A program made the translations under genes and the position numbers. Shown here piece by piece: positions 678 to 62,593 of a stretch of DNA of 64,000 nt. The number at the start of each line of letters is the position of its first letter. The stretch's first letter is position 1. Under the pieces are notes generated by a model. The model was not told the DNA's origin. It searched no databases and saw only the letters and a list, made by a program, of their open reading frames with translations. Where the stretch lies: IMG/VR virus record IMGVR_UViG_3300043426_000266, positions 62,001 through 126,000 of that record; one strand, given 5' to 3'.

Positions 678-728
678 TCACGATGCTCCAGCGAGTTCAT
701 ATCTTAACGATTAATTTGTATTTAATTA

Positions 729-750
729 CAGATATATATTATTTAAATGA
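729..750 (+). promoter_or_regulatory. phage early (virion RNAP) promoter motif
   Basis: CAGATATATATTATTTAAATGA; one of 11 copies; contains the phiKZ-type TATATTA(C/T) core. Confidence 0.7.
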
Positions 751-4502: not shown

Positions 4503-4515
4503 TTCCAAATCCTTT

Positions 4516-4537
4516 CAAACATATATTATCAACATGT
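4516..4537 (+). promoter_or_regulatory. early promoter motif variant
   Basis: CAAACATATATTATCAACATGT matches the 22-nt consensus. Confidence 0.55.
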
Positions 4538-5106: not shown

Positions 5107-5141
5107 ATAAGAGGGGCTTAGCCCCTCTTATTTTTTTTTTT
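5107..5141 (+). terminator. intrinsic terminator
   Basis: ATAAGAGGGGC-TTA-GCCCCTCTTAT followed by a long T tract. Confidence 0.85.
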
Positions 5142-5177
5142 AGTTTTCTTATGAATAATTAATCCTGGTAGTATATA

Positions 5178-10130: not shown

Positions 10131-10163
10131 AAAATTAATCGTTTCATCGATTCCAAATCATTT

Positions 10164-10185
10164 CAGATACATATTACTTACATGA
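10164..10185 (+). promoter_or_regulatory. early promoter motif
   Basis: CAGATACATATTACTTACATGA. Confidence 0.7.
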
Positions 10186-10782: not shown

Positions 10783-10863
10783 TTGAATCTGGCACGAAAA
10801 CTAGAATTGTATCATCCTAGTTTTCAGATTCACTCTTAAACTAATATATAATGTAGGTGCATA

Positions 10864-11079
10864 ATGAAGAAGTTCTCTACCTTTGGTTGGATGAACCAAG
10901 AGGCTCTAGCCTCAATGATTACCCCGGCTCAAATGGAATCATTAATTTCATGGATTGAATATCAGGGTTATGTTCCTGATGATCAAGCCATCAGAACTAA
11001 GAGATTAGACCAAAACACCATCATCCGTGCGTCGGAAGATGGTAAGAAGTTCAGACTACACCGACGCTTAGCTGCATAA
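10864..11079 (+). CDS. hypothetical small protein
   Basis: 71-aa ORF with AGGTG RBS. Confidence 0.7.
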   Translation: MKKFSTFGWMNQEALASMITPAQMESLISWIEYQGYVPDDQAIRTKRLDQNTIIRASEDGKKFRLHRRLAA

Positions 11080-11093
11080 CCTAGGTGTCGGTG

Positions 11094-11149
11094 AACCCCC
11101 TTAAGAGATTCTGGGTTAATGAATCCTTTGCCAGTCATGGTGAAAATAT
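11094..11149 (+). ncRNA. candidate structured RNA element (H-type pseudoknot + TGCC-N6-GGTGAAAATAT), copy 1
   Basis: AACCC/GGGTT and AGAGATTC/GAATCCTT pairings; ungapped alignment to the copy at 42158 with compensatory changes. Confidence 0.55.
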
Positions 11150-11185
11150 GAACAAACTAAACCTTCATTATCAAGAGTATTTAAA

Positions 11186-11311
11186 ATGAGTAATAAATTA
11201 ATTTTAATCATTACTACCTCAATAATCATTGTCCAAGCCATCGTTTTTGATGCCACCTGCTTTACCGATAATGGTAAGCGGATAGACAACTGTGAAATAA
11301 AGAGAGAATAA
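11186..11311 (+). CDS. 41-aa single-TM microprotein (not in ORF track)
   Basis: MSNKLILIITTSIIIVQAIVFDATCFTDNGKRIDNCEIKRE; CATTATCAAGAG leader; followed by a terminator. Confidence 0.55.
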   Translation: MSNKLILIITTSIIIVQAIVFDATCFTDNGKRIDNCEIKRE

Positions 11312-16973: not shown

Positions 16974-17017
16974 TTAGAGTTCTCCATTGCAGGTCTCATA
17001 TTAATTTTAAAAATATA

Positions 17018-17039
17018 TAGATATATATTATTTACGTGA
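17018..17039 (+). promoter_or_regulatory. early promoter motif
   Basis: TAGATATATATTATTTACGTGA. Confidence 0.7.
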
Positions 17040-18526: not shown

Positions 18527-18557
18527 AAGAAGGGGGTTAACCCCCTTCTTTTTTTTG
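18525..18557 (+). terminator. intrinsic terminator (perfect palindrome)
   Basis: AAAAGAAGGGGG-TTAA-CCCCCTTCTTTT followed by a T tract. Confidence 0.85.
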
Positions 18558-18588
18558 TTTTTCTATGAGATGAATACGGAGAAATAAA

Positions 18589-36500: not shown

Positions 36501-39396
36501 AACTGATTACGACTTTGATGATGTTTGTGATAAGTACGATGATGTTAAATCAATTCTTGGAGAACTTGTTCCTGCAAGTGATAAATCTAAGGAGGAAGCA
36601 AAAGCATCTGAGGAGAAGAAAGAAGGTGGTTTGCTTGATACGGCGAAGAAGGCATTAATGTTTGCTAGTCCACTAGGCGCTGCTGTCATGGGGCTTAAAT
36701 GGACAGCGAAGAAGATTGGTGATGTTTTTAACGTTAGTATTGGTGGAATGCAAAAATCCTTTTCTACAATGATGGATAAAGCATTTAAATCTTTAAGTGA
36801 AAAATGGGAAGGAGTGAAAGGTTGGGCGAAAAATGCATGGAACTCTATAACAAACTTAGATGCCGGTGGCATGGCAGATGCTGCTAAGGACGTCGTGATG
36901 AATGCCACTCCAGTTGGCTTAGCAGCACAGGCAGCTGGAGCAGTTGGGTCAGCAGTTGGGTCAGCAGTTGGTGGCGCTGGAGATGTAATCTCCAAGGGGT
37001 GGAGAAGTTTAACTGGTAAGACTGGTGAAATGCAAAAAGCAGTTTATGAGTCGTTCATCCGAGCTGGACTAACACCTAACCAAGCAAAAGCAATTACTGC
37101 TGAAGTTGGGCGAGAAAACGACTACAACCCGAGTACTATATTTGGTACCCACGTTGACCCTGCCTCCGGGGGTAAAGCGATTAATAACATCGGGATGATT
37201 TCTTGGAATGGTCCACGAGCTGAGAAATTAGCTGCGCTACTTAGAAATCAGGGGTTGTTAGACGCGAGTGGGAAGATGGTCCAAGGTCAAGCTGCTCTAG
37301 ATGTTCAGACTAAGTTTGCTGTTTCTGAAATGAAAGGACCTTATGCTAAAGGGTTAACTAATTTCTTAAACAATCCTAATGGTGATCCTGAGAGTTTTGC
37401 TCAAGAGTTGGGTAAAAAGTATATCGTTTGGGCTTATGGTCAGACTAAACTTAAGAATGGTAAAAGTTTTGATTGGAAAGCTCATGACGATAAACGTCGA
37501 AAATATCTACAGTCTATTAGTGCTTCCGTAGGCACATCACCGGCGGGTTCAACCGCAGCTGGAGCAATACCACCAACCATCGCTAAGCCGGGGATTATGT
37601 CTGGTGCAGCAACAGGTGTGGTGGCTGGAGCAAATGCTGCGGTAACCGGTAATGCTGGTAGTGTGAAAAATTCATCAGTACCGATGATTGGTATTGGTGG
37701 AACTGATCCTACTAAAGCAGCGGGGGCAAAAGCGCAAGCCATCTCTAAATCCACCCCAATAAATGCTAAGGATGCCCAGTGGGACTTGGATAAAATCGCT
37801 GAATTTGTTAGTAAAAAAACCAAAGGTACTTTTAAACCTGGTTTAAAAATCGGACAATGTGCCTTGTATGTTCGACAAGCTCTGCAAGCTGGAGATTTAC
37901 AGAAACAAATTCCTGCTGGTTTAGGCGATGCGTGGCAACTTGGTGCTAAATTAAAAACCATGGGCTGGGCTGTAGTTGGCAATATTAACACTATTAAGCC
38001 ATTAAAGGGTGATATTGGTTTCTTTGATAAAGGTTCTTATATGTCTGGAGGTAAACCTACACCGTATGGTCACGTATGTATCTTTACTGGAAGCGCTTGG
38101 ATTTCTGATTTTACTCAAGCCTCAATTTACCCAGGTAGCCAAATGGCGAAACAAGGAGTTAAACATGAAATTCTGCGTGCTGTAAAATCTATCAGCAATG
38201 GTAAACCGGCAATGGTAAACGTAGGTAGCGAAACTCAACCTAGTCAAAATCCTGAAGCCATGGGGACTACATCTGCACCACAGAAACCAGCTACCAACAC
38301 AGGTAATGCTTCTGCTCCTGCGGCTGGTGTGGTAGCTGGGGCTAAAGCAAGCGTTGCAGCTAAAGGCTCCTCAAGTGTACCGATGATTGGTATCGGAGGA
38401 AGTGATCCGACTAAAGCTTCAACATCTGCCACAGGCGCTGTTAAGGTAGCAGCCGCTGCTGCTGGTGGTGATCTAAAAGTCCTACTGGCTAAGGCCACTC
38501 CTGAACTTGTTGCTGCTGGCAAATTACACCATAGGCTTAAAGATAAAAAAGTTACATTGGCTGGAATGAATGAGACGTTTATGACTTTATTCTGGGCGAT
38601 GTTGGGTGAAGCTAGACAGAAGGGTTTAGGTGTTGTTCAGATTAATGAAGGTGTTCGTACATTGGCAGAGCAGAGAAGACTGTACGCGTTGTTTTGTGCT
38701 GGTAAAGGTCCGTTGGCCGCTAAGCCTGGTACGTCTCGTCATGGGTTCGGACAAGCAATGGATATCAATACTGTAAATGCTGATGAACTTGATAAAAAAG
38801 GCTTATTGGCAAAATGGGGTTTCAGTCGCCCTCTCATGAAGAGACTTGCAAGTGGGAAGTTGACAGAGACTTGGCACATCGAGAACAAATTTGTTAAACG
38901 GGATGGATGCCCTGCTCCTCAGATTGAAAAAGCCAAGGAAACCACTAGCGGCGCCATGGCGCCGACTGGAACCCCTTCCGCTAACACGTCAACCGCTAAC
39001 GCGCCAGCCGCTAACGCGCCAGCAGCCAACACGGGTAATGCTTCTGTTAACGCCGTGGTTAATGCTGCTGGCTATGGAATGACAAACACTGTTTCTAATC
39101 AACAACAAACCGACTCAATTAGTTCTTCGTCAGCTAATGATATTTTAACAAGACAGTTGGAGGTACAAACTCAGATTAGAAATGCGGTTGTTGAGTTAAA
39201 AGACTTTATTGTTAAACCCGTTTCTGCAGAAGAACGACAACGTTTAGAGGAGATGAAAAAACCTGCTGATATGCAATCTATTGGAGAGCAAATCGGCAAG
39301 TCAATTACTGAGGCAATTGGAAACAAGTTGTCTGGTAATAAAAGTAATTTAGATCTTCAAAAACCAAGGGCTCCAATTTCAGTGAGTAAGTTTTAA
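30511..39396 (+). CDS. tail tape-measure-like lysin (phiKZ gp181-like) with phage-tail lysozyme, CHAP-like and M15 peptidase domains
   Basis: 2961 aa, divergent from vRNAP beta'. Lysozyme-like AITAEVGRE...GMISW; CHAP-like GQCALYV...GHVCIF; M15 SRHGFGQAMD...ETWH. Confidence 0.85.
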   Translation: MAKRDIDDFEELDLGLDDDMGYEDNNRPSSDRKASIFSRSKNYAKSHYKAKFEDRNERKRLLKQAIPGSYGSAVDLAFDMKDDYDSIKYEVSKEWQKSKGPFKKLLKSQEGTLRALRLKKLADWANEEDRGRYAEEAVDQDDALTANLMGDFTKYKNSPAEKEKAATDKVDQKEKESDQEFKSKTLSATLKGTANLTSILKELQNQTSYQDQITFQYQRKNLEFNIRNFIESKKQTELLRTYKEEAISELKEIHKNTALPDAVKINQSELAGQIFKEKMLGNVASYFDGKMSTMRRKIVSRVKDRLLELTRDMGTNIEGMLEAASSQQESGGGSLLGMFGQMFADSKLDKPYNYVTGKATKYIRNKLGANTKINKFGKGLNSLIANAGTLGNEALITGKTGNKLLDGLSSFLGLNQAATTRSTRLRNSLSDNLDTATYMDVKFKQTVERVIPGWLSLIHKETYLTRIGSNSDKDYKKKSWDWDKEDFDNDQNVKDRAFTKVFKKENIEQFSMAMENVLRVYDPIAFLTLDARNELKDWIYNKIQSSRSPSFYNLMLEINTFKNKATRAQLIQLANFAADIHEEDLEYAEEGLLSEGKLIMRRPKYAEWAKKAKPYIDELASRPLFDINELMRIANTEQGKVFEEMGLVTRDGSGNLDMSVDYEKKIVRKMTSMDYKQIAKLKEGEGQSYRNNRGQQETRNRMELDNENMQDTIDDWLNSDARIDDKTYAILQTLLNNDTLDARSKKANEKKIKNILSSLIFQTNDEIREGKKSGRIATRAAGGIIPSFAKGGKNRKKKGKKSYLEAYKGGSTGNAPVDEGQLAIVHGQEFVTDATTTENNETLLELMNKFKAPVFLPDGKVNPVYYKAMGYEDEEEFRKDQSQQLRLAKKKLRADKFSAGARTGSAWVANKVKGLEGRDNSKTKEKIKAAASEITEEGKRIFDEAYKALNGMSEQQLQSVYSKLMTATDSSIFNASENALIASDASTHKKVLTVIKAKLREENRTKIVAELAKALGSQFYKKAKDRLKTFLNGGTEDTATTDNLKQVYNFGKNKVTGAYGEIKNFAGEQFNKTALKGRYDQAKGLMQKAWKELAIDIYLVVNPALVRLSAAGFESGMYIDKATGRVLESHHDINGEVVNTQGNIVLTDEELGKGLLDKEGNRINPSSLARYRNIARNKAVEAYNKYAKKHVDKYLNKGADLLLTAAERWQRMFKETVIDVYVTGKGDKPILTAVGFRAGEYLSTVSKKVLTDYLDIDGPVMTKNGQYLLLAEDLGNLIDKDGKPIKPTKLGGIGQRLFGIASEALGLGRIKTFGKKMFDKAKAFSAKKMAENFSKAGADAVDVYLADKMDTPTLYAKEFREGLYLDQATGEKLANHYMIKGPVIKTLDNGSVEVVLTAEDLQKGFVDAEGKPLPVVKVDFLRGSFFKGMLGNRLDGAKGRVKNFLNRFKKEKAEEVTEEAPTQTGSNKVIYYKDPLDGGLLPAFDLDAIKNWELYQVNLDTDNPDATVSRISDLSEIQKGFTVYRLKTGKSAPADKPMTVALLNSLGFIAVRSSVNQGVWFDEKGKKFKAEKKKPEQQGGQSKFSKLKGKLGSKLGGLKDKLKGKFTDEEGNFRIGSWQWKRKKKEEDGWFGRLGSALGLGKKKGDENPAKPSWLKTMFGWFSKKFIFMGLAAAGLVKALGAKISLGSMAAGLLAVKGISWALKKSLTGLVFKPLMNLIPWLGTKIMGAVRGRGMMGNGIGGLGKVARIGGAALGAHAIYKGLKGEEQFDENGDPIVDSEGNAVVKKDYMGAALGAVGVASMIPGVGGMAMSAGAALLTNPVGWAILGGVAVGAASYWLGKKALGWWKKGNALEESPLSAFRMIQYGFSPIDDKTMQPILQLEGYLSGMLVSGNDGINISNQVDPNGVFGIFGLKYGTGDAERNKSFLAWFLGRFKPVYLSYVKQMNAIKKTYKLDGIDTSVTAADRLSILENVHFKNQTDMNPYNIPVSPFEDPDETDYDFDDVCDKYDDVKSILGELVPASDKSKEEAKASEEKKEGGLLDTAKKALMFASPLGAAVMGLKWTAKKIGDVFNVSIGGMQKSFSTMMDKAFKSLSEKWEGVKGWAKNAWNSITNLDAGGMADAAKDVVMNATPVGLAAQAAGAVGSAVGSAVGGAGDVISKGWRSLTGKTGEMQKAVYESFIRAGLTPNQAKAITAEVGRENDYNPSTIFGTHVDPASGGKAINNIGMISWNGPRAEKLAALLRNQGLLDASGKMVQGQAALDVQTKFAVSEMKGPYAKGLTNFLNNPNGDPESFAQELGKKYIVWAYGQTKLKNGKSFDWKAHDDKRRKYLQSISASVGTSPAGSTAAGAIPPTIAKPGIMSGAATGVVAGANAAVTGNAGSVKNSSVPMIGIGGTDPTKAAGAKAQAISKSTPINAKDAQWDLDKIAEFVSKKTKGTFKPGLKIGQCALYVRQALQAGDLQKQIPAGLGDAWQLGAKLKTMGWAVVGNINTIKPLKGDIGFFDKGSYMSGGKPTPYGHVCIFTGSAWISDFTQASIYPGSQMAKQGVKHEILRAVKSISNGKPAMVNVGSETQPSQNPEAMGTTSAPQKPATNTGNASAPAAGVVAGAKASVAAKGSSSVPMIGIGGSDPTKASTSATGAVKVAAAAAGGDLKVLLAKATPELVAAGKLHHRLKDKKVTLAGMNETFMTLFWAMLGEARQKGLGVVQINEGVRTLAEQRRLYALFCAGKGPLAAKPGTSRHGFGQAMDINTVNADELDKKGLLAKWGFSRPLMKRLASGKLTETWHIENKFVKRDGCPAPQIEKAKETTSGAMAPTGTPSANTSTANAPAANAPAANTGNASVNAVVNAAGYGMTNTVSNQQQTDSISSSSANDILTRQLEVQTQIRNAVVELKDFIVKPVSAEERQRLEEMKKPADMQSIGEQIGKSITEAIGNKLSGNKSNLDLQKPRAPISVSKF
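33793..34760 (+). repeat. three internal protein repeats at exact 123-aa periodicity in the lysin
   Basis: IDIYL (33793), IDVYV (34162) and VDVYL (34531) are each 369 nt apart, with a shared G.Y...T....DI.G.V....L..E.L..G..D..G.. pattern. Confidence 0.75.
36940..36975 (+). repeat. 12-nt tandem repeat (AVGS) in linker
   Basis: GCAGTTGGGTCA x2 + GCAGTTGGTGGC. Confidence 0.7.
38978..39035 (+). repeat. 15-nt tandem repeat (ANAPA/ANTST) in linker
   Basis: CCGCTAACACGTCAA CCGCTAACGCGCCAG CCGCTAACGCGCCAG CAGCCAACACGGG. Confidence 0.7.
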
Positions 39397-39444: not shown

Positions 39445-41694
39445 ATGACAATTTCTTTTTTGAACTTGTCCGGTAGTCCAAAAATTAAAGACAGTGATTG
39501 GTTATCAAATTGTTTTATGTTATCATCTAAAAACATTGACAAATCCGCTTATAGCGCAATGATGTTATCTAGCGCACATCGTAAGTTTACCGATACTCGA
39601 ATCGGTGGGAATGTAGCAATTAACATGCCGCCTGCTTATACGCGGTTTGCTGACCCTAGAGCAACGGGGTTGAATGTTAAAAACATTCGAGGAACCAGAC
39701 CTGCTGGATTGGGGATGTATTGGTCTGATCAGATTGATGAACCTGCACAGATCATTCACCTTCAATTTGGAGTTCCGACGTTTCGGGGGATGCTTTCATT
39801 CTTTACATCAGTTTCGAATGTAGAAGCTGGTATTTTGGCTCGTACTGGTCGTGTGCCTATTTCATTCTTTGTTGGGCAGATTGTTGGGTTTGTTGTTGGG
39901 TTACGCTTATTACCTTTTATTCTAGTTGGTAAAGTAATGAAATATTTACTCAACCGTCAGGGTTCTAAGTACTATAATTTTAAACCCGCAATGCATCCTT
40001 ATTGGAACCGAGTTAATTTTATTGCAAACTCATTTGCAGTATCTGAAGGGATTGTTGACCGTGGCTATGGTCCAACTTCTGAACGTACACTTGCAGATGG
40101 TGTGAAACAAAACGGTGCAAACTTTGAAAACAATTTAGAAGCCAATAATACTGCATTAGAACCGTCTAATGTTGCTTCTGATAAACGACTTATGCGTGCA
40201 GCACATGCAGCTTGTCCTGAGTTGTTTTTAGAAAACGGCGGGGTCGATGTCTATCGAATAGCAATGCGTTATCAAAGTCTTGCGAATGCTCGCCGTGAGT
40301 TTATTGAAACTTTGGCTAAAAACGATGACCCTAAGACCTTGGTCACTCGATTGATTGAGGCTATGTATGTTAAAAAATATAACGTTAACTCGGAGGAGAA
40401 TATTCACAAATTAAGAGAAATTCATCAAGGTGAATACGCCGGTAAAGATTACCATGATGGTAAAGCGGATGCAATTACATCCCAAGCTAATGGTGAAGCT
40501 GAAAAAGCGCTGAAGACAGCGATGGCAAGTAGTACAACTACTGCTGACCAAGCAAATGCCGGAACAACACCAAGCACGGCGCCGCCTGCAGCCACAGAAA
40601 CACCCGCTGCGACTGCGGCGAATGGGGAAGCGACCATAGATCGTGAAAAAGCATATGACACTTTTGACACGACACTAATTACTGACCCAACAACCAAAGA
40701 AGTCAAACCGAAAGATGGTTGGTTTAAAAGCTGGTGGAATGGATTAGCTGGTGATGCGAAAGCAGGGTACGCGGGGGCTTTTTCTTGGGTGAGCTTTAAG
40801 GTAAATGCGACTGGTCCTGTTTCTGCAAGCTTCAGTAACTCAACGTCAACTCCTGAGATTAAGTCATCAATCAATGGATTCTCATCAACCGCTTCTAAAA
40901 TGAGGTTTAACTTTTCACAGGGCGCCACAGGGATCCCAGGAGTTGATACTTTGGTGTCTGGTATTAAAAATGCGGCTCTAGGGTTTGCATCTGGTGTAGA
41001 GTTAATGGGTTTGGTGTCAATGGCGGGAACTTCGTTTATTGATATTCCAGATACTTGGGAGGATTCATCGGCTAACCTACCATCAGAGTCATACGACATT
41101 CATTTGCGTAGCCCGTATGGGAATGCGTTATCACGTTACATGAATTTGTATATTCCATTATCTATGTTGTTGGCTGGCGCGTTACCAATCTCAACTGGTC
41201 GTCAATCTTATGCTTCTCCGTTTATCTGTCAGCTATACTCAGTAGGTCGTTCGGCAACTAAACTAGGGATGATTGATAATTTACAGATTACACACGGGGT
41301 TGGTAATGTTGGATTTAACCATGAAAAAAAACCCCTAGGTATTGATGTTAACTTGACTATTAAGGATTTAAACCGTAGTGTTCATGCTCCAATTGATACA
41401 GGTGGGATGATCTTAAACCCTTTGAATGCATTGTCTATCTTTGACGACGATAACGCATTCAATGAATACTTAAATGTTTTAACTGCGATGAGTGTTGCAG
41501 ATATGACAATGAGTACTCGTAAACTTCATCGTTCAATGCAATTGAAAATGATGCAATATGACTCTTTCTTTAGCGCTGGCCATTTTACATTAGCAGCAGC
41601 GGAATCCGCCCCAGGGCGCGCATTGCGTTCAGTGGGGTCGGTTGCCGGATTGGTATTCCCAAGTGTTGCACCTGGAATGAACCGTATACAATAA
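39445..41694 (+). CDS. baseplate hub/tail-tip protein (phiKZ gp182-like)
   Basis: 749 aa directly after the lysin; DTRIGGN..IN.PP..T.FAD, I.L.FGVP, L.SPYGN, GMI..L.IT.G motifs. Confidence 0.7.
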   Translation: MTISFLNLSGSPKIKDSDWLSNCFMLSSKNIDKSAYSAMMLSSAHRKFTDTRIGGNVAINMPPAYTRFADPRATGLNVKNIRGTRPAGLGMYWSDQIDEPAQIIHLQFGVPTFRGMLSFFTSVSNVEAGILARTGRVPISFFVGQIVGFVVGLRLLPFILVGKVMKYLLNRQGSKYYNFKPAMHPYWNRVNFIANSFAVSEGIVDRGYGPTSERTLADGVKQNGANFENNLEANNTALEPSNVASDKRLMRAAHAACPELFLENGGVDVYRIAMRYQSLANARREFIETLAKNDDPKTLVTRLIEAMYVKKYNVNSEENIHKLREIHQGEYAGKDYHDGKADAITSQANGEAEKALKTAMASSTTTADQANAGTTPSTAPPAATETPAATAANGEATIDREKAYDTFDTTLITDPTTKEVKPKDGWFKSWWNGLAGDAKAGYAGAFSWVSFKVNATGPVSASFSNSTSTPEIKSSINGFSSTASKMRFNFSQGATGIPGVDTLVSGIKNAALGFASGVELMGLVSMAGTSFIDIPDTWEDSSANLPSESYDIHLRSPYGNALSRYMNLYIPLSMLLAGALPISTGRQSYASPFICQLYSVGRSATKLGMIDNLQITHGVGNVGFNHEKKPLGIDVNLTIKDLNRSVHAPIDTGGMILNPLNALSIFDDDNAFNEYLNVLTAMSVADMTMSTRKLHRSMQLKMMQYDSFFSAGHFTLAAAESAPGRALRSVGSVAGLVFPSVAPGMNRIQ

Positions 41695-41724
41695 AGAGAG
41701 GAGCCTAGGCTCCTCTCTTTTCTT
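41693..41724 (+). terminator. intrinsic terminator (28-bp perfect palindrome)
   Basis: AAAGAGAGGAGC-CTAG-GCTCCTCTCTTT. Confidence 0.85.
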
Positions 41725-41745
41725 TATGTTGATTCCATTTTATTT

Positions 41746-41767
41746 CAGATATATATTACTTACATGA
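41746..41767 (+). promoter_or_regulatory. early promoter motif
   Basis: CAGATATATATTACTTACATGA. Confidence 0.75.
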
Positions 41768-41811
41768 ATAAATCCATTTATTAAACTTTTATTTTCAAAA
41801 AGGAAATTACC

Positions 41812-42144
41812 ATGAATACTGTTTCTACCACTGTTGACACTGCTGAAACTATTGCTAAAATTCAAGCCAATATAGATGCAATCGCTGCGTCTAACTTTGG
41901 TATTCATTTTTGCTGCAAAACCGCAGCGACAGCGATTAAGTTTGCTACACACGTTATGAACGATGTTGGTAATCCGTTTTATGGTGACAAAGTAGAAGTC
42001 AACAACCGTGAGGTTGTTATCTGTCCACCTAATAGTAACACATCATACAACGTGTGCAAACTAGCAGAAATATTCTGCACCGAGTTTTCTAATCAGTTTG
42101 GGATTGATATTATCGACTTCACTGAAACTGTTCATTACAACTAA
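41812..42144 (+). CDS. hypothetical early protein
   Basis: 110 aa with AAGGA RBS. Confidence 0.75.
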   Translation: MNTVSTTVDTAETIAKIQANIDAIAASNFGIHFCCKTAATAIKFATHVMNDVGNPFYGDKVEVNNREVVICPPNSNTSYNVCKLAEIFCTEFSNQFGIDIIDFTETVHYN

Positions 42145-42157
42145 TGGATAATTTCAA

Positions 42158-42213
42158 AACCCGTATTGATAGTTTGGGGTTATAAAACTATCTGCCTGCT
42201 AAGGTGAAAATAT
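42158..42213 (+). ncRNA. candidate structured RNA element (H-type pseudoknot + TGCC-N6-GGTGAAAATAT), copy 2
   Basis: AACCC/GGGTT and GATAGTTT/AAACTATC pairings; same spacing as the copy at 11094. Confidence 0.55.
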
Positions 42214-42249
42214 ATAACTTCTTAATCAAAACCATTGGAGATAATACCA

Positions 42250-42354
42250 TGAACGTAATAATTGAAATTTCAGAAAGCAAAGTCAAAGAGCTTGATAAAA
42301 TTAGTTTTGAAGAACTTGTAAAGCAGGTTCTTCAGAACGTAGAAATAAAGTAAG
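42250..42354 (+). CDS. 34-aa microprotein (not in ORF track)
   Basis: MNVIIEISESKVKELDKISFEELVKQVLQNVEIK; GGAG RBS. Confidence 0.55.
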
Positions 42355-42394
42355 GGCAACCCCTACTTTATTTTTTGTTTAATCTAAATAATTA

Positions 42395-42416
42395 CAAATA
42401 TAAATTATATACATGA
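42395..42416 (+). promoter_or_regulatory. early promoter motif variant
   Basis: CAAATATAAATTATATACATGA. Confidence 0.6.
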
Positions 42417-42454
42417 CTCAAACGTCATAACCTTCATTATCAAGGAATTTAATC

Positions 42455-42706
42455 ATGCGTACTTTTACACTACAAGATCTTCTTCAAACCATTAAAAATA
42501 AACGGGCAGCTCTAAATGAGATTGCTGGTTATTATCCTAAAGTCTATTTGGATGAAAAGCCGAGTTTATTGGTACATGGTGTTGTTGACAATATTAATGC
42601 CTCCGTGGTTCGTTTTAGTTTAGAGCCTAAAGAAAATGTGGAGTACGTCGAATACCCCCGCTACTCCGGGATTATGGTGATTAAACCCCAACCCCTGGAG
42701 AGCTGA
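42455..42706 (+). CDS. hypothetical early protein
   Basis: 83 aa with a CATTATCAAGGA leader. Confidence 0.75.
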   Translation: MRTFTLQDLLQTIKNKRAALNEIAGYYPKVYLDEKPSLLVHGVVDNINASVVRFSLEPKENVEYVEYPRYSGIMVIKPQPLES

Positions 42707-45442: not shown

Positions 45443-45454
45443 TGTAAAGATTTT

Positions 45455-45476
45455 CAGATCTACACTATCTACGTGA
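45455..45476 (+). promoter_or_regulatory. early promoter motif variant
   Basis: CAGATCTACACTATCTACGTGA. Confidence 0.55.
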
Positions 45477-45971: not shown

Positions 45972-46003
45972 AAAAGGGAGCCTAGGCTCCCTTTTATTTT
46001 TCT
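45972..46003 (+). terminator. intrinsic terminator (perfect palindrome)
   Basis: AAAAGGGAGC-CTAG-GCTCCCTTTT. Confidence 0.85.
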
Positions 46004-46033
46004 TAATTCTATGAAGAAGGATTGAGGTGAATC

Positions 46034-58641: not shown

Positions 58642-58730
58642 GATTTTAGCAGCTAAGTTACCTTTTATTTAATTAAAGCTTAATACGACGCTTACAAACG
58701 CATTTAGAGATAGATAAATGTAATAACTTA

Positions 58731-58804
58731 CAGACATACATTATTTACATGTAAATCAAATCATTTTAGATTAAATTTATTTCAGATATACACTATCTAA
58801 TTGA
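58731..58804 (+). promoter_or_regulatory. two tandem early promoter motifs
   Basis: CAGACATACATTATTTACATGT (58731) and CAGATATACACTATCTAATTGA (58783). Confidence 0.6.
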
Positions 58805-58834
58805 ATTCAACCTTAATTATCAAAGGATTTTATT

Positions 58835-59284
58835 ATGTCAACCTGTAATCATAACGTACCACCACTTAATTTAACTGGGTTTTATACTCACCTAACTCAA
58901 TGGACATCAACCTACGGATTATGGACATCAACCTACGAATTGACATTTGATGACTTTAGTGTTTCCCACGGTGGTTCATTATTGTTAATGGGGTTAATTG
59001 AATATACCAACGACATCGATCTCACAGTCAGTCAAGAGTTATTTGATCGATTCAATGATGGCTCTTATCGCAAAGTACAATTGTCTAATGGTCGTTACTA
59101 TCTTCAAGTAAGTAGAAGAATTACATTACATACTTCTGAGATCCCATGTTTGCAACTTTCACAATGTTTGGTTAAACATCCAAATGGAATATGGTATCGA
59201 AATGAAGAACAAACACTTCTTGATTACCAGGCACTTAATCGACCTAGTGATAAGGAAAAGATCAAACTACTAAAAAAGAAATGA
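58835..59284 (+). CDS. hypothetical early protein
   Basis: 149 aa with an ATTATCAAAGGA leader. Confidence 0.75.
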   Translation: MSTCNHNVPPLNLTGFYTHLTQWTSTYGLWTSTYELTFDDFSVSHGGSLLLMGLIEYTNDIDLTVSQELFDRFNDGSYRKVQLSNGRYYLQVSRRITLHTSEIPCLQLSQCLVKHPNGIWYRNEEQTLLDYQALNRPSDKEKIKLLKKK

Positions 59285-59322
59285 TGTAGATTTGATCAAA
59301 TCATTTTAGATTAAAATATTTT

Positions 59323-59344
59323 TAGATATATATTATTTAAATGA
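59323..59344 (+). promoter_or_regulatory. early promoter motif
   Basis: TAGATATATATTATTTAAATGA. Confidence 0.7.
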
Positions 59345-59377
59345 AATAAACCCTCATTATCAAAAGGAAATTAAACT

Positions 59378-62561: not shown

Positions 62562-62571
62562 CAATTTATTA

Positions 62572-62593
62572 CAAATATATATTATTTACATGA
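62572..62593 (+). promoter_or_regulatory. early promoter motif
   Basis: CAAATATATATTATTTACATGA. Confidence 0.7.

What the first reader, a model, noticed from the sequence alone, without database searches (positions are those of the whole stretch)
42158..42213. Second copy of the pseudoknot element, between a 110-aa early gene and a 34-aa microprotein
Seen: AACCC (42158-62) pairs with GGGTT (42177-81), and GATAGTTT (42168-75) pairs perfectly with AAACTATC (42185-92). TGCC lies at +35 and GGTGAAAATAT at +45, the same offsets as in copy 1. The flanking genes are unrelated to those at copy 1, so the element is retained or spread independently of its neighbours. Inference: a mobile or reusable regulatory cassette licensing expression of downstream microproteins.
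Basis: partly seen in the sequence, partly recalled or inferred. Interest (0 to 1): 0.7.

Follow-up and report, generated by a model that had tools for sequence, protein, structure and literature searches.

The report
Portable pseudoknot RNA in jumbo-phage early operons
A 57-59 nt folded RNA module (pseudoknot, hairpin and a fixed A-rich tail) sits between early genes of a small group of uncultivated giant phages; it is real, matches no Rfam family or paper I found, moves independently of its neighbour genes, and does not depend on the 34-aa gene behind it.

Summary
AACCC/GGGTT and GATAGTTT/AAACTATC pair as described. TGCC (+35) and GGTGAAAATAT (+45) lie at the same offsets as in copy 1 (11094-11152).

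The window comes from a 205-kb phiKZ-like jumbo phage. With a covariance model I found about 20 further copies in related uncultivated phages from freshwater and wastewater. I found none in three cultured relatives or in cellular genomes.

Fifteen distinct sequences are 94.5% paired, against 36-55% for slid controls. Six P2 pairs, one P3 pair and one P1 pair change on both sides. G-U pairs point to sense-strand RNA. There is no Rfam match.

The element lies 6-17 nt behind a stop codon inside early operons. It is followed by a 32-67 nt leader (mostly 35-40) plus a gene, or directly by a terminator. It is 95-100% identical where the adjacent gene is 57-92%, and recombination junctions sit at both of its borders.

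The 34-aa ORF is a real, conserved gene. It is deleted in close relatives that keep the element. Another downstream gene occurs with the element, with an early promoter instead, or with a plain spacer.

So "reusable cassette" is supported and "licensing microproteins" is not. My best guess (about 0.35) is a cis-acting junction or insulator RNA. A ribozyme, an aptamer or a decoy RNA remains possible.

The parts
41743..41766 (+). Early-type promoter TTTCAGATATATATTACTTACATG that starts the operon carrying copy 2
   Evidence: Member of the repeat family D1/D2, 9-11 copies in the window. Matches the predicted promoter consensus of related jumbo phages OBP/N1M2 (TTTCARRYAKATATTATYWAAGTG) and phiKZ TATATTAC (PMC7058600).
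41812..42144 (+). 110-aa ORFan gene upstream of copy 2 (stop TAA 42142-44)
   Evidence: ORF list. Homologues at 61-99% aa identity, always followed by the element. No Pfam or PHROG family.
42158..42216 (+). Whole element, copy 2 (the finding)
   Evidence: Covariance-model hit at 83.4 bits, E 1e-18. No Rfam family.
42158..42162 (+). P1 5' strand AACCC (pairs with 42177-81)
   Evidence: ACCC/GGGU is invariant, with one compensatory C-G to A-U change (L197) and one A-U to G-U change (L201).
42163..42167 (+). Loop L1 GUAUU (3-5 nt, U-rich, ends in UU in 14 of 15 sequences)
   Evidence: Alignment A10.
42168..42175 (+). P2 5' strand GAUAGUUU (pairs with 42185-92)
   Evidence: 98% of cells paired; 6 of 8 core pairs change on both sides across 15 sequences.
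42177..42181 (+). P1 3' strand GGGUU, lying in the loop of P2 (this makes the pseudoknot)
42185..42192 (+). P2 3' strand AAACUAUC
42193..42206 (+). P3 hairpin UGCCU-GCUA-AGGUG (U-G, G-U, C-G, C-G, U-A; variable tetraloop)
   Evidence: Predicted by folding in both copies. The loop-closing pair is A-U in 9 and U-A in 5 sequences; C-G becomes U-G once.
42207..42213 (+). 3' tail AAAAUAU; with the preceding G (42206) it reads GAAAAUA, which is invariant
   Evidence: GGUGAAAAUA is identical in the aligned instances that do not depend on the search pattern, the CM-found loci L275-L289. The pattern-found instances carry it by construction. After it come UG, CG, UA or GU.
42249..42353 (+). 34-aa microprotein gene (own RBS GGAG at 42236-39)
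   Evidence: Homologues of 35 and 36 aa in L281 and L284, with 13 invariant residues. Absent in L196/L206/L282/L283.
42347..42376 (+). Intrinsic terminator ending the operon; its 5' half overlaps the microprotein's last codons
   Evidence: Sequence; alignment with relatives.
42392..42415 (+). Next early-type promoter (start of the following cassette)
   Evidence: Repeat family D2.
11094..11152 (+). Copy 1 of the element: P1 11094-98/11113-17, P2 11104-11/11121-28, P3 11129-42, tail to 11149. It lies between a 71-aa gene (10864-11079) and a 41-aa membrane microprotein (11186-11311).
   Evidence: The orthologous locus in L142/L174 keeps the 76-aa upstream gene and the element, but has an extra 59-aa gene before the 40-aa microprotein.

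Best explanation
It is a 57-59 nt structured RNA module. Its parts are an H-type pseudoknot (P1 ACCC/GGGU, 4-5 bp, pairing the 5' end with the loop of P2; P2 8-10 bp of free sequence), a hairpin P3 that abuts P2, and an invariant single-stranded GAAAAUA tail. It is transcribed on the sense strand as part of early operons of a clade of phiKZ-like jumbo phages.

I think it acts in cis on the polycistronic early mRNA as a portable junction element. On this reading, a compact fold recognised by a conserved partner (an RNase, the ribosome or an RNA-binding protein) sets a defined boundary behind the stop codon of one cassette gene. That boundary would shield the upstream cistron's 3' end and give the downstream leader a constant, insulated context. 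Two early-gene cassettes could then be joined without the usual terminator-plus-promoter pair.

Shown: the structure, the strand, the location, the portability, conservation above that of the neighbours, and interchange with a promoter junction. Inferred: that it works post-transcriptionally in cis, and the boundary/insulation mechanism itself.
For: Structure: covariation in all three helices and 94.5% pairing, against 36-55% for slid controls.

RNA rather than duplex DNA: there are five independent G-U replacements in the stems (copy 1, L001, L201, L276, L288) and two invariant wobble pairs in P3. These would be A-C mismatches on the other strand. Every copy is on the coding strand of its neighbours.

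Early operon: an OBP/phiKZ-type early promoter lies upstream of the gene that precedes the element.

Junction position: the element starts 6-17 nt after a stop codon in most loci. It ends 32-67 nt before the next start (35-40 nt in most loci), which is the length of promoter-derived leaders. Otherwise it ends just before a terminator.

Interchange: the same 99-aa gene with the same proximal leader has the element in L278 and an early promoter in L280.

Selection: the element is 95-100% identical where the adjacent gene is 57-92%, and 86-97% where the downstream gene is 75-85%.

Not tied to one gene family: the flanking proteins are unrelated ORFans.

Copy 1's downstream leader carries the motif AACCTTCATTATCAAG, which is shared with early-promoter leaders (family D8).
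Against: No transcript ends, cleavage sites or binding partner are known. The public 'RNA' runs that hold this phage are assembled contigs and probably DNA.

A merely structural barrier would not need about 25 invariant unpaired or stem nucleotides.

Only 1-2 copies occur per genome of more than 200 kb, and many related phages have none. So it is not a general expression signal.

Where a terminator follows directly, a 3' shield looks redundant.

The 99-aa gene can sit inside an operon behind a plain spacer (L287). So insulation is not obligatory.
Confidence: 0.35

Rival explanations
1. One reading: a translational gate for the gene behind it. P3 sequesters an SD-like GGUGA. In about half of the copies an AUG follows at ideal spacing (GGUGAAAAUAUG). 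Folding, or a ligand or protein bound to the pseudoknot, would control a short upstream ORF that is coupled to the downstream gene.
For: GGUG is the 3' strand of P3 in every copy. In copy 1 and L001 the short ORF from this AUG ends in ATGA, overlapping the downstream start. In L183, L192 and L142 it is in frame with the downstream gene. RNAfold also proposes a helix CGUAUU/AAUAUG that would bury the AUG. Spacing to the downstream start is narrow, 35-40 nt in most loci.
Against: The AUG is not conserved among orthologous loci: L275 has UAUG, while L278 and L286 have UACG. It is absent in copy 2, the copy of this finding. Frame relations differ between the orthologues L142 and L174. The phage's normal ribosome sites are AGGA/GGAG 8-10 nt before ATG, and each downstream gene has its own. 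Four locus types have no downstream gene. The element persists after deletion of the microprotein. The flanking genes share no function that would point to a ligand.
Confidence: 0.17
2. A new small self-cleaving ribozyme acting as a natural insulator. It would cut near its 3' border, so that the downstream leader gets the same 5' end as a promoter-derived transcript.
For: It is small, pseudoknotted and has many invariant unpaired nucleotides. It is independent of gene family, sits in phage intergenic regions and occurs in a few copies per genome. By my own knowledge this is the typical profile of twister, pistol and hatchet ribozymes. The 3' border (AAAAUAUGAAC) resembles the start region of the early promoters (TTACATGAAC), and the leader lengths match.
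Against: No Rfam ribozyme family matches, even at E up to 10. Compared by hand, the order of helices fits neither pistol (no P2; the 3' tail does not covary with the linker), nor hammerhead (core A6-A9 missing), nor HDV-like folds. There is no cleavage data.
Confidence: 0.13
3. A trans-acting non-coding RNA carried in early transcripts. Examples would be a decoy or sponge for a host RNA-targeting defence or RNA-binding protein, or a 3'-UTR-derived small RNA whose seed is the invariant GGUGAAAAUA.
For: It is expressed early, lies in variable accessory cassettes and is independent of its neighbours. It is present or absent among related phages and has 1-2 copies. In L196, L176 and L179 the layout is structured domain, then conserved single strand, then terminator, as in 3'-UTR-derived small RNAs. 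By my own knowledge, nucleus-forming phages are mainly exposed to RNA-targeting defences.
Against: There are no tandem repeats and no adjacent toxin gene, unlike type III antitoxins. No CRISPR-like arrays of the P3-plus-tail motif were found in 401 sampled gammaproteobacterial genomes, and there is no CRISPR-DR hit in Rfam. No target is known. Most copies are followed by a gene, not a terminator.
Confidence: 0.15
4. A DNA-level signal: a special promoter (TGCC-N6-GGTGAAAATATG, with TATG as a phiKZ-type late start site) preceded by a hairpin.
For: phiKZ late promoters are TATG with G as +1 (PMC4666361). This phage shows T-rich TATG behind many terminators. The element takes the place of an early promoter upstream of the same gene in L278 versus L280. 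The distance to the next start equals a leader length.
Against: TATG is replaced by TACG, TATA or TAG in about half of the copies, including copy 2 and orthologues of TATG-bearing loci. In phiKZ any single change in TATG strongly reduces transcription. The upstream context is A-rich, not T-rich. Covariation with G-U pairs argues for RNA pairing, also within the supposed promoter part (P3). One or two copies per genome are too few for a promoter class. Some copies are followed only by a terminator.
Confidence: 0.08

Closest known systems
Classical H-type pseudoknots in phage and viral mRNAs (T4 gene 32 leader operator, preQ1-I and SAM-II aptamers, frameshift or readthrough stimulators)
   Same: Same topology: S1-5', S2-5', S1-3', S2-3'. 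Short loops whose lengths fit the stems: L1 of 3-5 nt across an 8-10 bp stem, L3 of 3-4 nt across a 4-5 bp stem. Location in an mRNA leader or intercistronic region.
   Different: No sequence or model match to any Rfam family. There is an extra flush hairpin and an invariant GAAAAUA tail. There is no slippery site and no conserved readthrough product. It is not linked to one gene, whereas the T4 operator always precedes gene 32 and riboswitches precede genes of one pathway.
PeSL (promoter-early stem-loop) mobile regulatory cassettes of T4-type phages (Arbiol et al. 2010; recalled, not re-read here)
   Same: A short, highly conserved non-coding module at the borders of shuffled early ORFan cassettes in a hyperplastic region. 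Recombination junctions lie at its edges. It is more conserved than the genes it flanks.
   Different: A PeSL is an early promoter plus a terminator-like stem-loop. This phage has its own analogue of that (terminator plus TTTCAGATATATATTAC promoter). The pseudoknot element lacks the promoter consensus, shows RNA-type covariation and is much rarer.
Intercistronic mRNA stabilisers and processing sites (REP hairpins in E. coli malE-malF, RNase III sites of T7 early mRNA; own knowledge)
   Same: Structured elements just behind a stop codon inside polycistronic messages. They are independent of gene identity and set segment boundaries and stability.
   Different: Those are simple or long hairpins present many times per genome. 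This one is a pseudoknot with many invariant nucleotides, and only 1-2 copies occur per genome.
Small self-cleaving ribozymes common in phages (pistol, twister, hammerhead, hatchet)
   Same: Similar size, pseudoknotting, invariant junction nucleotides, a gene-independent intergenic location and a few copies per phage genome.
   Different: No covariance-model match. The helix order and core nucleotides do not fit any of them. Catalysis is untested.

Membership tests
Any Rfam 15 family (riboswitches, ribozymes, CRISPR repeats, ToxI and others) | Covariance-model score at or near the family's gathering threshold | tested here: not met
   No hit in the whole window at gathering thresholds. Nothing overlaps the element at E up to 10 in the 201-nt region or in 9 other loci that carry it.
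Frameshift or readthrough-stimulating pseudoknot | A slippery heptamer 5-9 nt upstream, or a stop about 8 nt upstream with a conserved in-frame extension | tested here: not met
   No X XXY YYZ motif lies before P1 in copy 1 or copy 2. Readthrough frames stop after 20 codons (copy 2) and 4 codons (copy 1). The stop-to-P1 spacer varies from 6 to 17 nt.
preQ1-I type riboswitch | A pseudoknot of about 34 nt with an A-rich L3, a 3-4 bp P2 and the SD of a queuosine-related gene in P2 | tested here: not met
   P2 is 8-10 bp and L3 is 3-4 nt. The local AAAACUA of copy 2 is part of the covarying P2 and is not conserved. The downstream genes are unrelated ORFans. There is no RF00522 hit.
phiKZ-type late promoter | TATG with G as the transcription start, every position required | tested here: not met
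   9 of 15 distinct copies have UAUG. Copy 2 has UAUA and others have UACG or UAG. The requirement is taken from PMC4666361. Transcription starts were not testable.
Early promoter of the OBP/phiKZ group | TTTCARRYAKATATTAY consensus | tested here: not met
   The element has no such motif. The consensus search hits only the true promoters upstream of the preceding gene.
Type III antitoxin RNA (ToxI-like) | Tandem repeats of 34-45 nt directly upstream of a toxN-like endoribonuclease gene | tested here: not met
   The unit is single at every locus. Neighbouring proteins have no family hits.
RNA anti-CRISPR (solitary repeat unit) | Near identity to the repeat of a CRISPR array in hosts | tested here: inconclusive
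   No arrays of TGCC-N6-GGTGAAAATA were found in 401 sampled gammaproteobacterial genomes, with at most 2 chance hits per genome. There is no CRISPR-DR family hit. The host is unknown, so the right genomes may not have been searched.
Pistol, hammerhead or HDV-like self-cleaving ribozymes | Family-specific helix order and catalytic core; self-cleavage | tested here: not met
   No model hit. By inspection there is no pistol P2, because the linker and tail do not covary. There is no CUGANGA core and no nested double pseudoknot. Self-cleavage itself is not testable with these tools.
PeSL-like mobile regulatory cassette | A conserved non-coding module at the borders of shuffled early ORFs, containing an early promoter | tested here: inconclusive
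   The border position and shuffling are met. The promoter content is not met.

The most novel reading that the evidence does not exclude
The element founds a new class of small functional RNA peculiar to nucleus-forming jumbo phages. It could be a new self-cleaving ribozyme used as a natural cassette insulator. It could be a ligand-binding aptamer. Or it could be an early-expressed decoy RNA against RNA-targeting host defences. Its about 25 invariant nucleotides would form the active or recognition site.
Probability: 0.3. Interest if true: 0.85.

Novelty: new variant of a known kind. Interest (0 to 1): 0.58.

Why it matters
Little is known about post-transcriptional control in phiKZ-like phages, which transcribe with their own polymerases and separate transcription from translation. 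This compact RNA is strongly selected and has covariation support in all three helices. It can be moved between gene cassettes and can stand where a terminator-plus-promoter junction normally stands. That gives a concrete, 57-59 nt handle for experiments. If it insulates or processes early mRNAs, it would explain how these phages shuffle accessory genes without breaking their expression, and it would be a ready-made part for phage engineering. If it is catalytic, ligand-binding or an anti-defence decoy, it would be a new RNA class.

Tried and rejected
- **Rfam.** Searched at gathering and at permissive thresholds and found nothing.
- **Plain MFE folding of the region.** Not better than shuffles, and it cannot show a pseudoknot. 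On the isolated 59-mers it recovers P2 and P3 in 9 of 12 sequences. It also proposes a helix between L1 and the tail (CGUAUU/AAUAUG). That helix is absent in copy 1, L142 and L278 and would clash sterically with P1, so I treat it as unproven.
- **Short pattern TGCC-N6-GGTGAAAATAT in viral contigs.** 118 hits, all chance except L001. Relaxing the tail gave 28 hits, none genuine.
- **Genome collection scan.** 31 hits, all at or below 32 bits against at least 45 bits for true copies.
- **Repeat family from the metagenome scan.** About 50 copies in Ga0049105, Ga0209255 and others score only 17-26 bits, lack P2 and have a different enclosing helix. I judge them unrelated.
- **Close relatives via the 749-aa virion protein.** Only G001 (45% identity) and G002. 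The cultured phages pVp-JHP1101, Proteus phage 10 and Erwinia AH06 have no copy.
- **Translational bypass.** In copy 2 the take-off codon AAC before TAA matches an in-frame AAC right after the element. There are no matching codons in copy 1 or L001, so this is coincidence.
- **uORF coupling.** The AUG is not conserved (see the rival explanations).
- **CRISPR-repeat mimicry.** No arrays found. A Nitrincola hit turned out to be an unrelated MITE.
- **Public reads.** Only assembled contigs were available, and the 'RNA' libraries are probably DNA, so there is no transcript-end information.
- **Literature searches.** No description of this motif found.

Full report
**What the window is.** The window is bases 62001-126000 of a 205,063-bp virus record with 38% G+C. 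The 749-aa ORF just upstream of the finding (39445-41694) matches virion proteins of about 300 phiKZ-like jumbo phages at around 30% identity. A 24-nt repeat, TTTCAGATATATATTACTTACATG, occurs 9-11 times in front of genes. It matches the promoter consensus predicted for the related jumbo phages OBP and N1M2, and it contains the phiKZ early motif TATATTAC (PMC7058600). Public runs that hold the sequence come from freshwater and wastewater. So this is an uncultivated phiKZ-like (chimallivirus-type) phage, and the finding lies in an operon driven by an early-type promoter at 41743-41766.

**The observation.**
- AACCC 42158-62 pairs with GGGTT 42177-81.
- GATAGTTT 42168-75 pairs with AAACTATC 42185-92.
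- TGCC lies at +35 and GGTGAAAATAT at +45.

Copy 1 (11094-11152) has the same layout, with different letters in stem 2.

**Relatives.**
- A pattern scan of IMG/VR found one more copy, in a 233-kb contig (L001). Its virion protein is 45% identical to the window's.
- A metagenome scan plus a covariance model gave 11 more loci.
- Fetching contigs that encode homologues of the flanking proteins gave about ten more.
- The own genome has exactly two copies, G001 has one and G002 has none. Three cultured relatives have none.
- Hits in cellular genomes are chance: at most 32 bits against at least 45 for true copies.

**Structure.** On 15 distinct sequences (alignment A10):
- P2 (8-10 bp) is 98% paired, and six pairs change on both sides.
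- The closing pair of P3 is A-U in nine sequences and U-A in five. One C-G becomes U-G.
- P1 (ACCC/GGGU) is almost invariant, but it has one C-G to A-U double change (L197) and one A-U to G-U change.
- Overall pairing is 94.5%, against 36-55% when partners are slid. No shuffle out of 500 reaches the covariation score.
- G-U replacements (five independent ones, plus two fixed wobble pairs in P3) outnumber A-C mismatches (two).
- All copies lie on the coding strand of their neighbours.

Together these point to a sense-strand RNA rather than duplex DNA.

The loop lengths fit a classical H-type pseudoknot (inference from established pseudoknot geometry). L1 is 3-5 nt, and the longest form goes with the longest P2 (10 bp, L150). 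L3 is 3-4 nt. GGUGAAAAUA is identical in the copies found independently of the search pattern (the CM-found loci); the pattern-found copies carry it by construction. After it the sequences diverge.

MFE folding alone gives no support. On the isolated element it recovers P2 and P3, and it suggests an alternative helix between L1 and the tail. That helix is not universal.

**Context.**
- The element begins 6-17 nt after a stop codon, mostly UAA, in most loci.
- It is followed either by a 32-67 nt leader (35-40 nt in most loci) and a gene of 34-99 aa with its own AGGA/GGAG ribosome site, or by an intrinsic terminator. L196-type, L176 and L179 have the terminator directly behind it. L201 has it about 75 nt further on.
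- Flanking proteins are unrelated to each other and have no Pfam or PHROG family.

**Linkage.**
- The 110-aa gene and the element stay together in the window, L196, L206 and L281-L284, while what follows varies.
- The 71/76-aa gene and the element stay together in copy 1 and L142/L174.
- A 99-aa gene keeps the element in front of it while the upstream gene varies (132, 158, 92, 86, 242 or 130 aa).
- L202 and L286 share the upstream gene and the element but not the downstream gene.

So exchange points lie at both borders of the element.

**Conservation.** The element is 95-100% identical where the neighbouring 110-aa gene is 57-92% and the microprotein gene 66-72%. It is 86-97% identical where the 99-aa gene is 75-85%.

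**Variation in wastewater relatives.** In most of them the whole stretch 41767-42367, from promoter to terminator, is replaced by other sequence. A minor variant keeps the gene and the element exactly up to 42214 and then diverges.

- The 34-aa ORF is a genuine gene. L281 and L284 encode 35- and 36-aa homologues with 13 invariant residues.
- In L196/L206/L282/L283 the ORF is deleted. Only its last codons remain, and they form the 5' half of the terminator. The element is unchanged there.
- The 99-aa gene occurs behind the element, behind an early promoter with the same proximal leader (L280), and behind a plain 90-nt spacer that the model does not hit (L287).

So the element neither needs nor is needed by a particular downstream gene.

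The SD-like GGUGA in P3, together with an AUG at good spacing, exists in nine of 15 distinct sequences. It is not conserved between orthologous loci (UAUG against UACG), it is absent in copy 2, and it differs from this phage's usual ribosome sites.

The TATG at the 3' end resembles the phiKZ late start site (PMC4666361). That motif tolerates no substitution, and here it is often substituted.

**What it most likely is.** Settled:
- It is a conserved, portable RNA motif of three helices (a pseudoknot plus a hairpin) with an invariant tail.
- It is embedded in early mRNAs at cassette junctions.
- It matches no Rfam family, and I found no description in the papers I could search.

Its function is inferred. 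I favour a cis-acting junction or insulator element, at about 0.35. On this reading it marks a boundary in the polycistronic early mRNA and lets cassettes be joined without a terminator-plus-promoter pair. This reading accounts for four things: its position, its interchange with a promoter junction, its independence from gene identity, and the exchange points at its borders.

It does not explain well the many invariant nucleotides or the low copy number. Those features keep three more novel readings alive:
- a translational gate (0.17);
- a trans-acting decoy or small RNA (0.15);
- a self-cleaving ribozyme (0.13).

A DNA-level promoter is unlikely (0.08).

**Limits.**
- No transcript data exist for this clade.
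- The collections could be scanned only with exact patterns that require the invariant tail. More divergent members would therefore be missed, and for the pattern-found copies the invariance of the tail is partly by construction. The copies found through flanking proteins (L275-L289) did not depend on the pattern, and they keep GGUGAAAAUA.

Noticed in passing
window 726-749, 4513-4536, 10161-10184, 17015-17038, 41743-41766, 42392-42415, 45452-45476, 58728-58751, 58780-58804, 59320-59343, 62569-62592: A family of promoter-like repeats, TTtCAGATATATATTAyTTAcATGA, in front of small genes. It matches the predicted promoters of jumbo phages OBP/N1M2 and contains the phiKZ early motif TATATTAC.
   Followed up: partly
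window 41767-42367: In wastewater relatives of this phage, the whole early cassette (promoter, 110-aa gene, element, 34-aa gene, terminator) is replaced by other sequence between conserved flanks. This is modular shuffling at promoter and terminator repeats, like the PeSL cassettes of T4-type phages.
   Followed up: partly
window 11160-11192, 42429-42461, 58809-58841, 59349-59375 (repeat families D8/D9): A conserved leader motif, AACCTTCATTATCAAGG, just upstream of the ribosome sites of several early genes. It also lies behind copy 1 of the element.
   Followed up: no
window 5140-5150, 18555-18565, 41715-41722, 46000-46010 and many places in the rest of the genome: Terminator T-runs are often followed at once by TATG(A/C), for example tttttctATGag and ttctttATGttg. 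This looks like the phiKZ-type late promoter TATG fused to terminators.
   Followed up: partly
window 11186-11311: A 41-aa predicted membrane microprotein (MSNKLILIITTSIIIVQAIVF...CEIKRE) behind copy 1. It has 40-aa homologues ending in CEIKRE in L142 and L174, so it is a real small gene.
   Followed up: partly
L132-L209, many contigs of Ga0049105, Ga0209255, Ga0066192, Ga0209780 and Ga0209562: A repeat family of about 50 contig copies (...GGGTTCTTACGTCTGTGCCAATTTTGGTGAAAATAGATCAAGAAATGCGACCGTGAGAGTGCTCGCAGACGG...) was caught by the search pattern. It scores low with the model and has a different enclosing helix (CGTCTG/CAGACG). Its origin is unknown.
   Followed up: partly
G003 (Nitrincola MAG), e.g. 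L290-L297: A dispersed MITE-like repeat of more than 40 copies with inverted ends CCTCTGTGGTGAAAA...TTTTACCACAGAGG. It is unrelated to the element.
   Followed up: partly
L287:579-668: The spacer that replaces the element upstream of the 99-aa gene can be drawn as another H-type pseudoknot (UCUCU/AGAGA interleaved with GGUAAU/AUUACC). It is a single sequence with no covariation and an MFE z-score of +0.64, so this may be chance.
   Followed up: partly
window 37678-37718 / 38377-38417 and 38287-38314 / 39019-39046: Direct repeats at about 90% identity, spaced about 700 nt apart, inside the giant 2962-aa ORF that precedes the 749-aa virion protein gene. This suggests an internal domain duplication.
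   Followed up: no
window 10783-10863: The spacer before the 71-aa gene of the copy-1 operon has a hairpin (GAAAACTAG...CTAGTTTTC) and TATATAATG, but no early-promoter consensus. Its role is unknown.
   Followed up: no
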